Shown here: positions 749 through 40,540 of the stretch, piece after piece | Layout: every line of letters begins with the position of its first letter | Numbering within the stretch: the stretch's first letter is position 1 | Source of the DNA: Orbicella franksi | Lineage: Eukaryota | Assembly (NCBI GenBank): GCA_964199315.1 | Contig: OZ116703.1 | Coordinates: 744,001 to 808,000, forward strand | Length of the DNA: 64,000 bases | Direction: 5' to 3' | Notes under the pieces: model-generated | Told to the model about the DNA's origin: nothing | Databases searched by the model: none | Seen by the model: only the letters and a program-made list of their open reading frames with translations | Position numbers and translations under genes: made by a program

Positions 749-3700
749 ATGGTTAAATTTGGGTAAGAGTAAGACAGTAAACTGGGTAAGATTAAGACAT
801 ATACTGTAAATATCTTCTGTCATTTATCACAGGAAGCTCGATCCGCCAGAAGAAGAGCCAAGTGGTAAGTTAGTTTGGCTATTTCTTAAGCTCTCTGTTA
901 TTTTACATCAAAATAGTAAGCTATGCGTTAGAGGTTAGCGGGCATCACGGCTGATTCTTTTTTTCCAGTTGTTCGCACATCTCGTAAAGTCTATAATTAG
1001 ATCAGTTTTTTTTTTTATCAAACATAATAAGGTCCATTGTTTTCAAAAACTATTATTATAAGGAAATTAAATTATTGATTTTTCTGACCACACTTATTCC
1101 CTCTGAATTGCCATTGTGGATAAAATCCTGGTGTGTGACCATTCAAATGAAAGTTGTTGGGCAGTATTGTCATTTGGTAATGTTTCTTATACTGGACAAG
1201 GTAATTCTAACTTTTTCAGTCTTTGCATATAACTCTAGTTTGTGAAAATTCAAATAAAAGCTATTGAGCAGTATTGCACTCTGAAAGGTGTTTGTGACTG
1301 TAAGTCCATTTCAGTTTACTTTTAATTTCCCCAATGGCTTTTTTAACTTCTCTTAAATCGTTTCCTAATTAAATTCCTTTTAAAGGGCAAAAAGTACAGG
1401 ATGCTTTTTCCTCGGAAAATGAAAGCAACGAAAAGACAACGACAAGCTGTAACGTGCCAAATCACCACAAGAAAATAAAATGGAACTTTAAGCTGGTCCG
1501 CCCTGAAGTCCTCAAATGCTATCGGAGGATCGTTGATGGGTTGAATCGCGCTGGACCAGAACGAAAAAGAAGCGATGAGAATGAAACCGTACCACTACAG
1601 CAAAATGATCTGACTTCGAGGGAGGAGAAAAAGGAAAGTGCTTTCGGGCCAAAGAGAAAGCTGGACCCCGATAGTGTTAAAAATTGTGTGAAGGAGTCAA
1701 CTTCAGCAGCATGTGTGCTGCCAACGAGCTGTTCCAAATTCCTGACCATTTCTCACGAGAAGTTAGAACCTTCCAAAGGTAAGACTGAAAAAAGGAGATG
1801 ATATAAATAGACAATAGCTCCTTACGTACTTCTTTCACTCTAATGAGATCTTCGTTAGAGAAACGAAAGATTCCAGTTACTCGACTGTTATTCTCCTAAA
1901 ACTGATTTTCAAAGTAATATGCAGCTCTTACAAAAGTAGCTAAAAACGTACTCCGATCACGCGCCGTAAATTCCTCAAGGTTCCCCAACCTTTTGCAAAT
2001 ATCTTCTGCATGTCTTCGATCATTTTTTGCATATATATTACCTGAACTTCCGAGAACTCCAAAAATTACCGATAAAGATTCAAAGACGTTTCAACTCTCC
2101 AAAATTGGGCAACCCAGTTACCTCTTGGAATGAATGAGTGAAACGAGTGCAATGACGGTTTGGCCGTTACCATGGTAATAGTCCGCAATAAAGAATCCCG
2201 ACCGAGAAGTAGCCAATCAAACGACTCACTTCACGTGCATTAACTGCTAAGTCAATGTTTTTGAATTCACTTCCCTTCAGAAATCAAGAACGGATGCACC
2301 ATGAATAATCATGCACCAACGCAGCAAAATAAGCTTGAGCGTTTGATTCTAGATACTCCAACTAAAGAGAAACTGCATCACGTAAGTCTCACAGATTTCA
2401 AGTAACTTACAACAATTTTTTAGTCAGTTAAGTTTGACGTCATGAAATGATAAAAAATTATGTCCTTGTTTGTGTTCAAAACTTGTTTTCGACAGCGACC
2501 TTGGTTATGAAGAACACAATAGAGTTCGATTTGACAAGCTGTTTCTTGCTTGTCTGTGTACGTCAGATAGCGCAGTCCAGTGAATATGTTTATTCGCATA
2601 ATCATGTTTATAGAGCATTTTCACTAACGTAGCCAGCACCTATGCAAATTTACTGGAACAAACAAGTCTTTGCATAAGAAAAGAGTTCAACACCCACAGG
2701 ATTGGTTTGGTACACCAACATGGCCGCCGTTTCATTGTTTAGAACACCAAAATGGCTGCCGTGATGTCATGTGAAAACGCTCTATATCTGGTCTTATTAT
2801 ATGCCTAGCTCCGCGGTTGTTAAGAAGAAGAAAATCCCACCCTGCGAATAGCCCGCTCGGCATTCCTTACTGTGTCCCGCAAGAAAATGGTGTTCTTAGG
2901 AATAAAATGAATTCTTTATCGAGGAGTCGTGTTTGGTTTATTGACCTCCCAAGCAGCTTAAGGCCTGGGTCAGGAATGTAGAGTAGAATGATGGTTGGGC
3001 AGCTATATCTCTTGTTATGTTTGGTTTCTAACGCTAAAATTTCCCTGATTATAAAACTAGGCGTCCTGCCTTGCCTTAACATACTATTTTGATCAAGTGA
3101 TCATTTTGCTAAAATTTGTAATTCGGCGAATTGGTGGCGTAAACGTTTGATGTGATCTCCTTTGATTTCGTTTTTAGAAGATATAAATGATCAAAAGTCG
3201 AATTTTGTTGAAAATAACGACTTTTCACCCCACAACATTTTTCTGCGGAAAGAGGGACCGTCATTTCAAACGTTAGAAGATGGAAAACGCGTTTTTGTTG
3301 GATGATATTACTAAAAATAATGGCTAGTTTCGCCTAAACGTCACGATGCCACGTGACCTGTCAAAAGCAAAAATTTTACTTTGAAATGATCAGGACGTTA
3401 AAACCTACCTGTGCCCTAAATTTTTCCATTTTATCATTCTTCAATAGGAAATAAGAAAAATAATCAAAGATCATACAAGAGAGGCGATGGACAGAGCTGA
3501 AAGCTTGAAGTCTCGTATATCCACCCTAGAAAGTGAAAACCGTTGGTTAAAACATAGAGTCACTCTCTTGTGGGGCGCTCTTAGGAAACAACTCACTCGT
3601 CGAAAGCAAAATAAGGTCAGTCATTTACCTACTATTTGTTTTGAAACCAGCGTTGTCAACTTGCAAAGTTGATTGCTAATGGCCATTGCTCTGGTAGCGA

Positions 3701-6700
3701 TGATAATAATTTGCATATTTTATGCCCAACTTTATTTATGTTAACCTAGTTCACAGCATTAATCATCACAGTTTTCCAGTTATAAACTAGCATTAATCAG
3801 GAAATGAAATAACTTAATAGGAACACGACGCGAAAGGCGAATAGTAATTCGATTCAGCTCTCCTTTTACCTTCCTAATATTATATTTGATTTCTATAGGT
3901 TCCTACAACAGCATTAATAAGCTCCAAACTACAAGAAAAGCCACAAGTTAAGTCAGATGAGAGTGGATGTCTGGAAGCGTTGCTGCAGCCACAACTGCAC
4001 TCTAAAACTGCAATTGGAAATAAAACAAAAGATGGATCATCTAATTCTCTCCAAAGGTCTGTCACCACTGACACCAACTATTCCTTGCCCTTTGATAGTG
4101 AAGCAGGTGATGAGACTCATGAGAAGGATAAAGCACTCCCAGTTGTTGGATCTGATCCAAAAATACGACCACCACATAATACTATAATCGCTTCAGTGGA
4201 GCACAGCATCACCAATGATCGGACCACAAAATCAGTCAGCACAGGTTCCAGTGGTCCCATCGCATCCATCGGCCAAGACACAACGCTTGCCTCTATTTAT
4301 CGTCCAAAACACGCTCAAACGTTGTCCAAAAGCCCAGTTCAAACTGGATTTGGACCACCAACAAAAACAGCCTTACACAATCCAGTTTTGTCTCCAGTTG
4401 TTACTTTGCATCATAAAGGAATTAATGTACCCTCCAATGGTAAAAATTCAAATTCTGCACCAAATCCCGTCTCCCTTCTTTGTCAAGTCTTGGACGAAAT
4501 CCTCGCCAGTTCTGCAAAAGAAGTCCCAAATCAGTGTACTTTAAACCCGTTGTGTAGACTTGAAGCCGCCACACTACCCAAAAACGTCTACAAGCCTCTT
4601 ACACATACCGCCACAGGAATAATGACGTCCCAAACAACCCATCCTGAAAACAAAGAGGTCTTATGTAAGCAGCACTATTCTGACCAAAATAAGAAGATAT
4701 CCATGAATTTGTCTTCCACCCAAACTGAAAAAACCTGTCAAGGCGACAACAAAACGTTATTGGCTAAGCACACAGCAGCGGGATACCTTTCTCCAATTTC
4801 ACTTGATCAAGAGACATCTAAAGTAGAAAGCAAGCACAGAGAATTATTGGGAAGTACTTGGATTGTAGAGAATGAAAGAAAAAAAGAGGCATCACTTCTT
4901 ACCAACGACGGTACGTGTTACTACATAACCCATGCAGATACTCAGTTAACGGATTGTCAACCACAATCAAATATCGCAACCGTGGCCAGTCCAGTTAGCT
5001 CTTATTCACAGCTACCAAAATCGATTCCTGAGAATCCATCGGTTTTGGGCAGTTCTGGCCAGTCAGTAGGCCTACTGAATGGCACTAACACGCTAGCGCA
5101 AGCTGCAGGGCTTGGCAGTAAAACTACGGACCCAATCCTCTCTCCAGAGAAGTCCAGTAAAACTCCGCCACTGGGTAGAACACTTGGTGAGAGCTACAAG
5201 ATTCACACCCGCGATCTGAGCCACCAAGGTCTCAATAACCACGCTTTAGAAGGATATTGCGTGAACTCCCAGTCACAAACTTCTCAAAGAAGTTTTATTT
5301 CTCAGCCTGAGGAACCCCAGAGGCATAAACACGTCGTTGGGCAACATGTTCCTAGCAAGGAACCTCTAAAAGGACAGTGTACAAATGTAATTACGAGACA
5401 TGTCGATGAACACCAAAAGTCACTCAAAGTTAGAAACCAAAAATTGGACAAAACGGAACTGTTGAACCCTCCAGAGCACGTAAACAGTCTTTCCCTCCAG
5501 TACGAGGAACGAGCGACTCACTCACAGCAAGATAATAGTGTTTCCGTAAATGAACGTCTCTGTAACGGCGATCAAGATTTAGCTTCGGTTTCTCAAACCA
5601 AACTCAAGGCGATGCCTTATCAAGCTAATCCAGAAGAGGGTGATAATTCCCTTTCACCTCCCAGATTTTACAATAGTCGAGAGTGCCAAGAACACACACT
5701 GAGGCAAGCCCAAAACACTACCTTGGCTCTAAACCATGCCATTTCCAAACCTAGGTTCTTGCCCTATCCACCAATAAGACCTAAAGAACAGCAGACCCCT
5801 TTCGTTCCAGTAAGATCCAATATCCAATACGTTACCAAAGTGAACAAGCAACAATCGCCAAAGTCAGATGGATTGCCACGACTAACATCACCACTCAATG
5901 GTGATGCATTCAGGTGGCCGCACATCGAGGAAAAGTCTACAAAGAGTGGCAATAAGGAATTCTCTGACCAATTACCAAAATTTTCATGTCCTCCAAGTGA
6001 TGTCCGGCTACATAGCCCTTGTTCTTCCAGCACCAATACGTCATCGAAGTACAACAAAGAAAGTCTTCTGTTTCACCTTCTTCACTCCGATCGCGTGCCA
6101 TACATTCCACATTATTTCCCGACGCGCAATCTTCAGACTGTTAATGCGGCCAATCTTCCAAATAAGAGCTCTGAAACATGCAGACGGTATGTTTACTTAC
6201 AGCCAAAACGTTATGTTCAGAACAGTATACAAAATCTACAAGAGTCATCCTTGTGCAATAGCGATAAAATAAAAAGTGAAGGTATAGCATTACCCTGTAA
6301 GCCGGTTTTGACGGTCGGAGAAGGTTCTTTTAACAGTGCATCCTTCCATCCGACTTCAAACCCGAGCCCACGAATAGAACTATCACATCCATGTCAGCGG
6401 TACATCACTCAACTGAGGAACTCCCCTCACCAATTATCTCACGACAATCCCATCTACGCAACTGCTAAACTACCATCGTATGCAGAAAGTGAATCACTCG
6501 AGCTAAGGAACAGTTCACAGCAAGGTTTGAAATTTCCAAGCCCGTATAGCTCGATGAAACGGCAAGAGACCTGTCAACGAGAGGGTTATGACGCGCATGA
6601 AATGCATCTTCAAACGTCACTCTCAGAACACAAAAAAGATAACGACAATCTACCACAGTACCAACGACCGCATCTTGTCCAGTACCACCACAAAAAAATC

Positions 6701-40500: not shown

Positions 40501-40540
40501 TTTTAGTGATCCGTGCACCGTTGCATTAACTCCTTCATGA
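34584..40540 (+). CDS. ATF7IP: Gene 3: activating transcription factor 7-interacting protein (ATF7IP/MCAF1/Windei homologue), about 1293 aa
   Basis: Exons 34584-34615, 35194-35222, 35802-36125, 36238-36368, 36808-36981, 37176-37223 and 37397-40540 join in frame (phases 2,1,1,0,0,0). The C-terminus GIVLSWN...YELFA...[33 protein letters not shown]...GPFSDP is the ATF7IP-type FN3 domain. The coiled-coil exon resembles the SETDB1-binding region (comparison from memory). Confidence 0.92.
37435..37950 (+). repeat. Coding minisatellite: nine 57-bp (19-aa) units in ATF7IP
   Basis: Consensus MAQTTSVTKPVGLVSxAGG is repeated 9 times in frame. Confidence 0.9.

What the first reader, a model, noticed from the sequence alone, without database searches (positions are those of the whole stretch)
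749..40540. Cluster of three ATF7IP-type paralogues with a shared exon skeleton; only one keeps the FN3 domain
Seen in sequence: genes 2 and 3 both have an acceptor exactly 16 nt before the ATG and a 32-nt first coding exon (MDEAERHPKGR vs MDGSERPEKRR, phase 2). They also share a 29-nt micro-exon and a 174-nt phase-0 coiled-coil exon with LEREN at codons 31-35. Gene 1 has the same phase series as gene 3 (2,1,1,0,0), a KLD micro-exon and an LESEN coiled-coil exon. Each gene then has a 2.5-3.1 kb low-complexity exon with no alignable similarity. Established: ATF7IP binds and stabilises the H3K9 methyltransferase SETDB1 through its coiled-coil region and recruits partners through FN3. Inference: an old local expansion produced two FN3-less adaptors or competitors of the transposon-silencing cofactor. 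The ORF track alone hides this relationship.
Basis: partly seen in the sequence, partly recalled or inferred. Interest (0 to 1): 0.8.

Follow-up and report, generated by a model that had tools for sequence, protein, structure and literature searches.

The report
Coral ATF7IP gene plus two FN3-less paralogues
A stony-coral gene for ATF7IP, the helper of a transposon-silencing enzyme, lies next to two fast-evolving sister genes that keep its start, intron layout and coiled-coil helix but lack its C-terminal FN3 docking domain; what these two do is untested.

Summary
Three spliced genes lie here in an Orbicella-like coral. G1 is on + and its first coding exon lies upstream of the window. G2 is on -, 24729 to 8072. 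G3 is on +, 34568 to 40540.

All three share these features:
- a 32-nt phase-2 first coding exon (M-D/E-x-x-E-..-K-R-R);
- a 29 or 32-nt K-L/I-D/Y micro-exon;
- a phase-0 coiled-coil exon of 168 or 174 nt with LE[RS]EN;
- a 2.5-3.1 kb disordered exon.

Only G3 ends in the ATF7IP-type FN3 domain (Pfam fn3_4, E 8.6e-31). RefSeq models, a JGI ORF and a metatranscriptome contig support the junctions. The trio is syntenic in at least three other coral assemblies.

The coiled-coil exons of G1 and G2 match G3 well above heptad-preserving shuffles. A G2-only profile ranks ATF7IP-type helices above all decoys. A G1-only profile does not, so G1 rests mainly on gene structure.

No coral helix, G3 included, matches Pfam ATF7IP_BD, so SETDB1 binding is only inferred. 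It also missed a 48-nt exon shared by G2 and G3, and a conserved GC-AG intron retained in the one G2 transcript.

The parts
833..864 (+). G1 exon 2, the 32-nt KLD micro-exon (KLDPPEEEPS), phase 2 to 1. Exon 1 (MEDSEVLPKRR) lies upstream of the window.
   Evidence: RefSeq P0117; for the missing exon 1
1386..1778 (+). G1 exon 3 (393 nt, phase 1 to 1)
2281..2381 (+). G1 exon 4 (101 nt, phase 1 to 0)
3448..3615 (+). G1 coiled-coil exon (168 nt, phase 0, LESEN at codons 27-31). It has a 4-residue deletion relative to G2 and G3 that all G1-clade members share.
   Evidence: dN/dS 0.24-0.31
3899..6847 (+). G1 large disordered last exon (2949 nt), no Pfam domain
   Evidence: dN/dS 0.60-0.72
24682..24729 (-). 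G2 5'UTR exon seen in transcript contig L008
17084..17131 (-). G2 exon with 16 nt of UTR plus 32 nt coding (MDEAERHPKGR, ATG at 17115), phase 2
14830..14858 (-). G2 29-nt micro-exon (KIYEWPLQA)
14494..14609 (-). G2 exon before the coiled coil (116 nt, phase 1 to 0)
13559..13732 (-). G2 coiled-coil exon (174 nt, phase 0, LEREN at codons 31-35)
   Evidence: dN/dS 0.20-0.35
12653..13558 (-). G2 intron with a GC donor (gcaagt). The donor is conserved in all six other loci checked, and the intron is retained in transcript L008.
12605..12652 (-). G2 48-nt exon (KTSQMIARETQVNMAL)
12333..12380 (-). G2 second 48-nt exon (ENDLKVSRGTQVNMRV V), a tandem copy of the previous exon type
8072..10543 (-). G2 large disordered last exon (2472 nt), no Pfam domain
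34568..34615 (+). G3 exon with 16 nt of UTR plus 32 nt coding (MDGSERPEKRR, ATG at 34584), phase 2
35194..35222 (+). G3 29-nt KLD micro-exon (KLDEVQEVS)
35802..36125 (+). G3 exon 3 (324 nt, phase 1 to 1)
36238..36368 (+). G3 exon 4 (131 nt, phase 1 to 0)
36808..36981 (+). G3 coiled-coil exon (174 nt, phase 0, LEREN at codons 31-35), predicted as a single helix
37176..37223 (+).
   Evidence: RefSeq P0089 and JGI ORF P0096
37397..40540 (+). G3 large last exon (3144 nt) ending in the FN3 domain
40229..40519 (+). ATF7IP-type FN3 domain (Pfam fn3_4, PF16794, E 8.6e-31)

Best explanation
G3 is the coral orthologue of ATF7IP/MCAF. G1 and G2 are old, linked paralogues of it that arose by local duplication. 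They kept the 5' module: a basic N-terminal motif that looks like a nuclear-localisation signal, the K-L/I-D/Y micro-exon and the single-helix coiled-coil exon. G2 also kept the 48-nt exon that follows. Their long disordered exon diverged beyond recognition and carries no FN3 domain.

Shown:
- the gene structures and their shared skeleton;
- transcription and splicing;
- purifying selection on the helix exon in all three genes;
- conserved linkage across several corals;
- separate, well-supported G1, G2 and G3 clades.

Inferred: the helix is the partner-binding element, possibly for SETDB1 as in mammalian ATF7IP. Without FN3, G1 and G2 cannot recruit FN3 clients. They would then act as alternative or competing cofactors that use their own short conserved motifs in the disordered exon.
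For: Identity of G3: Pfam fn3_4 E 8.6e-31. Its named relatives are ATF7IP.

Shared skeleton and phases.

First coding exon: 32 nt and phase 2 in G1 (species B, species C, L015), G2 (window, species B) and G3 (window, species B). The N-terminal motif aligns with vertebrate ATF7IP N-termini.

Coiled-coil exons by hhalign:
- G2 vs G3: score 36.9, probability 94%, 53 ungapped columns starting at the exon boundary.
- G1 vs G3: score 32.3, probability 90%.
- Heptad-preserving shuffles reach at most 19-23.

Full-length G1 vs G3 profiles match only at the helix and at residues 1-18, collinearly.

A G2-only HMM ranks 15 ATF7IP-type helices above the best of 71 decoys. Those decoys were the other hits of the merged-profile search of 1.8 billion proteins.

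The merged profile finds the helix exon of a distant gene whose downstream ORF carries fn3_4 at E 2.7e-35.

Tree: G1 clade support 1.0, G2 clade 1.0, G3 clade 0.93.

Synteny: the genes share contigs in species B, in species C (G1 and G2) and on contigs of 214,936 and 1,003,891 bp; G1 and G2 share an Oculina chromosome.

Transcripts and models: RefSeq models P0089, P0117, P0069; JGI ORF P0096; contig L008.

Selection: dN/dS is 0.19-0.35 on the helix exons and 0.6-0.72 on the G1 and G2 big exons, with ORFs intact in every orthologue found.

Literature: mouse ATF7IP lacking FNIII still restores SETDB1 localisation, while loss of the helical SETDB1-binding region does not (PMC7706265).
Against: - Pfam ATF7IP_BD hits none of the three genes, nor the Acropora orthologue.
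- hhalign of each coral helix profile against the vertebrate ATF7IP_BD region gives under 1% probability. Homology of the helix to the SETDB1-binding region is therefore unproven even for G3.
- The G1-only HMM scores G3 helices at 25-28 bits, but two generic coiled coils score higher.
- G1 vs G2 similarity is borderline: score 22.8 against a shuffle maximum of 23.1.
- The big exons share nothing. A partial duplication of the 5' module fused to unrelated sequence cannot be excluded.
- The O. faveolata RefSeq model of G2 lacks the N-terminal and helix exons.
- The only G2 transcript seen retains the intron after the helix exon.
Confidence: 0.8

Rival explanations
1. Partial duplication or exon shuffling. 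Only the 5' module of ATF7IP (first coding exon to coiled-coil exon, plus the 48-nt exon in G2) was copied and joined to unrelated disordered coding sequence. On this reading G1 and G2 never had an FN3 domain to lose.
For: There is no detectable similarity between the big exons. G1 and G2 have their own conserved islands, which G3 lacks.
Against: All three genes have the same overall layout, with a single 2.5-3.1 kb last exon right after the helix module. Disordered sequence here evolves fast: G1 big exons are only about 25-28% identical between distant corals. Loss of similarity after whole-gene duplication is therefore expected.
Confidence: 0.12
2. G1 and/or G2 are unrelated coiled-coil nuclear proteins. 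Their likeness to G3 would be convergence: a generic LExEN heptad pattern, a generic basic N-terminal signal and a chance match of intron phases.
For: LE[RK]EN-type helices are common. The library search returned many generic coiled coils (bZIP, Rab11-FIP3, LRRFIP) at similar total scores. Two decoys beat G3 with the G1-only HMM. Pfam gives only weak generic coiled-coil hits.
Against: Several independent features coincide:
- a 32-nt phase-2 first coding exon with the same motif;
- a 29 or 32-nt micro-exon starting K-L/I-D/Y;
- identical phase series;
- a helix exon of the same length with the motif at the same codons;
- an ungapped alignment starting at the exon boundary;
- the 48-nt QVN exon in G2 and G3;
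- physical linkage conserved across corals.
The G2-only HMM separates cleanly from decoys.
Confidence: 0.05
3. G1 and G2 are decaying duplicates (pseudogenes or non-functional transcribed remnants).
For: The big exons have high dN/dS (0.6-0.72). G2 shows intron retention that puts a stop after the helix exon. The RefSeq G2 model is truncated.
Against: ORFs of 800-1000 codons are intact in all 17 orthologues found for each gene, and in a distant taxon for G1. The helix exons have dN/dS of 0.2-0.35. The GC donor is conserved in six other loci, not degraded. Spliced models exist in Oculina and Orbicella.
Confidence: 0.03

Closest known systems
ATF7IP / MCAF1 (vertebrates) and Windei (Drosophila), cofactors of the H3K9 methyltransferase SETDB1/Eggless
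   Same: G3 has the C-terminal fn3_4 domain (E 8.6e-31). It has a helical region upstream, separated from FN3 by long disordered sequence, and an N-terminus of the M-D/E-x-x-E-E-..-K-K type. G1 and G2 share the N-terminus and the helix exon with G3.
   Different: No coral helix matches Pfam ATF7IP_BD or a vertebrate BD alignment. G1 and G2 have no FN3 at all. SETDB1 binding is untested.
ATF7IP2 / MCAF2 (vertebrate paralogue, germline-specific)
   Same: It is a precedent for a duplicated ATF7IP with a specialised role in directing SETDB1. This comes only from the abstract of PMC10982687 as listed; I did not read the paper.
   Different: ATF7IP2 keeps both ATF7IP_BD and fn3_4 (P0054). The coral paralogues lost or never had FN3, and they arose independently within cnidarians.
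Experimental dFNIII mutant of mouse ATF7IP (PMC7706265)
   Same: It has an FN3-less architecture with the helical region retained. It still restores SETDB1 nuclear localisation but silences less efficiently.
   Different: It is an engineered deletion of an otherwise identical protein. G1 and G2 are natural genes whose helix is only about 21-28% identical to G3's.

Membership tests
ATF7IP/MCAF family | C-terminal ATF7IP-type FN3 domain (Pfam fn3_4, PF16794) in G3 | tested here: met
   E 8.6e-31, 106 bits against a cut-off of 27.1, residues 983-1079 of ORF 37283-40537
ATF7IP/MCAF family | C-terminal fn3_4 domain in G1 and G2 | tested here: not met
   No Pfam family for the G1 or G2 big exons, nor for the Oculina full-length models. 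hhalign of the G1 and G2 families against the G3 family finds nothing in the FN3 region.
ATF7IP/MCAF family | SETDB1-binding helical domain recognisable as Pfam ATF7IP_BD (PF16788) | tested here: not met
   There is no hit for any of the three genes or for Acropora ATF7IP-like P0030, even at E up to 10. Profile comparison against the vertebrate BD gives under 1% probability. Vertebrate controls hit at 1e-28 to 1e-79. Because G3 also fails, the model appears too narrow for cnidarians.
ATF7IP/MCAF family | Helix exon of G1/G2 homologous to the helix exon of fn3_4-bearing genes | tested here: met
   G2: hhalign 94%, and the G2-only HMM ranks ATF7IP-type helices above all 71 decoys. G1: hhalign 90% and z of about 7.6 over heptad shuffles, but two decoys outscore G3 with the G1-only HMM, so the result is weaker.
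ATF7IP/MCAF family | Shared gene structure with the bona fide orthologue (first coding exon, micro-exon, intron phases) | tested here: met
ATF7IP/MCAF family | Physical binding to and stabilisation of SETDB1 | not testable with these tools
   This needs co-IP or complex modelling with the coral SETDB1. No solved structure of the ATF7IP BD was found.

The most novel reading that the evidence does not exclude
Corals run a three-member ATF7IP system. The canonical FN3-bearing cofactor (G3) would be complemented or antagonised by two FN3-less paralogues that still engage SETDB1 through the conserved helix. In addition, G2 may be switched by regulated retention of its conserved GC-AG intron between two products: a 121-residue protein made of the N-terminus and the helix only, which could be a dominant-negative, and the full-length protein.
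Probability: 0.15. Interest if true: 0.65.

Novelty: new variant of a known kind. Interest (0 to 1): 0.42.

Why it matters
ATF7IP is the obligate partner of SETDB1 in silencing transposons and germline genes. How this axis is organised outside bilaterians is essentially undescribed; one full-text search found no paper linking ATF7IP to cnidarians.

RefSeq calls all three genes 'uncharacterized protein', and standard domain searches do not connect them. The finding gives:
- an identified coral ATF7IP orthologue;
- two natural FN3-less relatives that could separate the scaffold role (helix) from the recruitment role (FN3);
- an example of paralogy that is recoverable from exon skeleton and synteny when most of the protein is disordered and unalignable.

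Functional importance is unproven.

Tried and rejected
- Pfam scans of the single exons and of the Oculina and Acropora full-length models gave only weak generic coiled-coil hits and no ATF7IP_BD.
- hhalign of the coral helix profiles against a vertebrate ATF7IP_BD alignment found nothing. It still served as a control showing that coiled coils do not automatically score high.
- PDB sequence searches with the helix profile and with a vertebrate BD segment gave only generic coiled coils, or nothing.
- The long multi-stretch hits of the library search are bZIP, Rab11-FIP3, LRRFIP and CCDC144C-type proteins, not relatives.
- My first guesses for the G3 exon 4 acceptor (36280 or 36310), and my direct join of the helix exon to the big exon, were replaced after comparison with RefSeq and JGI sequences.
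- The Logan contig L001 turned out to be unspliced and said nothing about junctions.
- An ESM-Atlas query meant to learn the taxon of locus L016 gave no taxon.
- AlphaFold2 of the helix exon gives one continuous helix (pLDDT 96.6). It does not give the helix-loop-helix I had considered because of G1's 4-residue deletion.
- Taxon names for the divergent G1 and G2 members could not be obtained, so the age of the duplications is not dated.

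
Full report
**What is there**

The window comes from a stony coral close to Orbicella faveolata. RefSeq proteins of that species are 98-99% identical to the translated exons. Four long ORFs stand out. Three of them are the last exons of the genes in question: 3980-6847 (+), 10507-8072 (-) and 37283-40540 (+).

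The third ORF ends in an ATF7IP-type FN3 domain (Pfam fn3_4, E 8.6e-31). Its named relatives are vertebrate ATF7IP and ATF7IP2 and an Acropora 'uncharacterized protein'. The other two ORFs have no Pfam domain.

**Gene models**

I derived the exons in three ways: by spliced comparison with annotated orthologues (Acropora P0030; Oculina P0069 and P0085), by tblastx against divergent coral loci, and by checking splice sites and phases. I then checked them against O. faveolata RefSeq models and transcripts.

| Gene | Strand | Exons | Phases |
|---|---|---|---|
| G1 | + | exon 1 outside the window; 833-864; 1386-1778; 2281-2381; 3448-3615; 3899-6847 | 2,1,1,0,0 |
| G2 | - | 5'UTR exon 24729-24682; 17131-17084 (ATG 17115); 14858-14830; 14609-14494; 13732-13559; 12652-12605; 12380-12333; 10543-8072 | 2,1,0,0,0,0 |
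| G3 | + | 34568-34615 (ATG 34584); 35194-35222; 35802-36125; 36238-36368; 36808-36981; 37176-37223; 37397-40540 | 2,1,1,0,0,0 |

Confirmed:
- The 16-nt acceptor-to-ATG spacing and the 32-nt coding part in G2 and G3.
- The 29-nt micro-exons.
- The 174-nt phase-0 exons with LEREN at codons 31-35.
- In G1, a 32-nt KLD exon and a 168-nt exon with LESEN at codons 27-31.

Corrected:
- The ATG at 749 (MVKFG) is not the start of G1. RefSeq P0117 begins MEDSEVLPKRR-KLDPPEEEPS. That exon is absent from the window.
- In a related species the G1 first coding exon lies about 700 nt upstream of the point matching window base 6. There it again has a 16-nt spacing and a 32-nt coding part.
- The 16-nt spacing varies in other species and genes (19, 10 and 9 nt), whereas the 32-nt phase-2 coding part is constant.
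G3 has RKQSKISQSVQVNIDS. G2 has two copies, KTSQMIARETQVNMAL and ENDLKVSRGTQVNMRVV.

**Transcript support**

- JGI ORF P0096 joins the G3 helix exon, the 48-nt exon and the big exon.
- Metatranscriptome contig L008 joins the G2 5'UTR exon, exon 1, the micro-exon, exon 3 and the helix exon exactly as modelled. It also joins the two 48-nt exons to the big exon.
- L008 retains the 906-nt intron after the helix exon. That intron has a GC donor (gcaagt), conserved in all six other loci examined.
- Retention explains why the O. faveolata RefSeq G2 protein (851 aa) starts at MIARETQ inside the first 48-nt exon.
- The Oculina RefSeq model does splice this intron.

**Are G1 and G2 paralogues of G3?**

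1. Gene skeleton. The first coding exon, the micro-exon, the phases, the helix exon and the giant last exon all correspond.
2. N-terminal motif. The motif M-D/E-x-x-E-..-P/E-K-R/G-R-K-L/I-D/Y/N is shared by all three families in several species. It aligns with the N-termini of vertebrate ATF7IP (MDSTEEPQKKVFKARK).
3. Helix exons by hhalign on four-species alignments:
   - G2 vs G3: score 36.9, probability 94%, 53 ungapped columns from the exon start.
   - G1 vs G3: score 32.3, probability 90%.
   - G1 vs G2: score 22.8, probability 43%.
4. Null distributions. Column shuffles that keep the heptad register gave means of 10-12 and maxima of 19-23. Reversed profiles gave 6-13. Against a vertebrate ATF7IP_BD alignment all three coral profiles score under 1%, so a high score is not automatic between coiled coils.
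5. Full-length comparison. The G1 and G3 family profiles match only at the helix (188-245 vs 181-238) and at residues 1-18 vs 1-18, collinearly. The big exons share nothing.
6. Library search. A merged helix profile searched against 1.84 billion representatives returned 106 hits.
   - The single-stretch, full-length hits are helix-exon ORFs of this family.
   - The long multi-stretch hits are generic coiled-coil proteins.
   - One distant hit, P0166, lies 1.7 kb upstream of an ORF with fn3_4 at E 2.7e-35.
7. Tree of the helix exons. G1 has support 1.0 (10 members, all with the same 4-residue deletion), G2 has 1.0 (11 members), and G3 has 0.93 and includes a second fn3_4-linked subgroup. The P0166 group is unresolved at the base.
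8. Single-family HMMs against the library hits used as decoys.
   - The G2 HMM places 15 ATF7IP-type helices above the best of 71 decoys.
   - The G1 HMM scores G3 at 25-28 bits over nearly its full length, but two short decoy matches score higher.
   - G2's link to ATF7IP-type helices is therefore solid on sequence. G1's link rests more on gene structure and linkage.

**Conservation and selection**

- G1, G2 and G3 lie on the same contig in species B, in the same order and orientation.
- G1 and G2 are adjacent in species C and share a chromosome in Oculina.
- A much more divergent taxon has a G1 gene with the same first exon (MDDSEISPKRR), the helix exon and a collinear 977-aa big ORF that is only about 25-28% identical.
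- dN/dS is 0.19-0.35 for the helix exons of all three genes, 0.26-0.48 for the G3 big exon, and 0.60-0.72 for the G1 and G2 big exons.
- All orthologous big ORFs are intact.

These are expressed genes under selection, not pseudogenes. Their helix is constrained and their disordered part evolves fast.

**Mechanism**

Established from the literature (PMC7706265):
- In mouse ATF7IP, a helical SETDB1-binding region is needed for SETDB1 nuclear localisation.
- The FNIII domain is dispensable for that localisation but improves silencing through clients such as ZMYM2.

AlphaFold2 predicts the coral helix exon as one continuous helix (pLDDT 96.6).

Inferred:
- G3 works as the canonical cofactor.
- G1 and G2 keep the N-terminal and helix modules and may engage the same partner without FN3-mediated recruitment, acting as alternative or competing cofactors.

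This inference is weak. No coral helix, G3 included, is recognisably homologous to ATF7IP_BD, and the G1 and G2 helices are only about 21-28% identical to G3's. I put roughly 35-40% on G1 or G2 binding SETDB1.

**Novelty**

RefSeq calls the three genes 'uncharacterized protein'. The one literature search that paired ATF7IP with cnidarian terms listed no ATF7IP paper among its top 12 results.

Vertebrate ATF7IP2 is a known paralogue but keeps both domains. I therefore rate this a new variant of a known kind, of moderate interest.

Noticed in passing
window 12653-13558 (-), donor at 13558: The intron after the G2 helix exon has a GC donor (gcaagt). The donor is conserved in all six other loci checked, and the intron is retained in the only G2 transcript contig found (L008). 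Retention places a stop four codons after the helix exon (…HKL-ASIL*), giving a 121-residue protein made of the N-terminus and the helix. It also explains the truncated RefSeq model that starts at MIARETQ.
   Followed up: partly
window 37176-37223 (+); 12605-12652 and 12333-12380 (-): G3 has one 48-nt phase-0 exon carrying an S/T-x-Q-V-N-I/M motif, and G2 has two in tandem. Oculina G1 has a similar 'KTQVK' at the start of its big exon. The distant fn3_4-linked gene in L016 has 'SVQTED' just after its helix. This may be a conserved short linear motif of unknown function.
   Followed up: partly
window 24682-24729 (-): The G2 5'UTR exon lies 7.5 kb upstream of its first coding exon. G2 therefore spans about 16.7 kb and points head-to-head towards G3, whose own 5'UTR exons were not located.
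   Followed up: no
window 17311-17500 (-): A block just upstream of the G2 first coding exon, inside the long first intron, is conserved with the divergent species C (L006 2598-2784). It could be a regulatory element or an alternative 5' exon.
   Followed up: no
G1 big exon, about window 5150-5230 and about 5800, 6480, 6760: Short, highly conserved islands sit in the otherwise fast-evolving G1 exon: NPVSLLCQVLDEIL, LAQAAGL, ISKPRFLPYPPIRPK and ESLLLHLLHS (an LxxLL-like motif). Several are also conserved in the very divergent L015 orthologue. G2 has its own islands, such as FLTVDDPVRPASDSGPFSIRRLL. These are candidate partner-binding motifs that could stand in for FN3.
   Followed up: partly
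window 37400-38000 (+): The start of the G3 big exon holds about nine tandem copies of an 18-residue unit (…MAQTTSVTKPVGLVS.A.G…). This was seen only by eye in the ORF translation; no repeat tool was run and it was not analysed.
   Followed up: no
window 55787-56906 (-): Three overlapping reading frames of 336-370 aa are made of a short repeat (…HCATLRHIVP…). This is a nucleotide tandem repeat that reads open in all frames.
   Followed up: no
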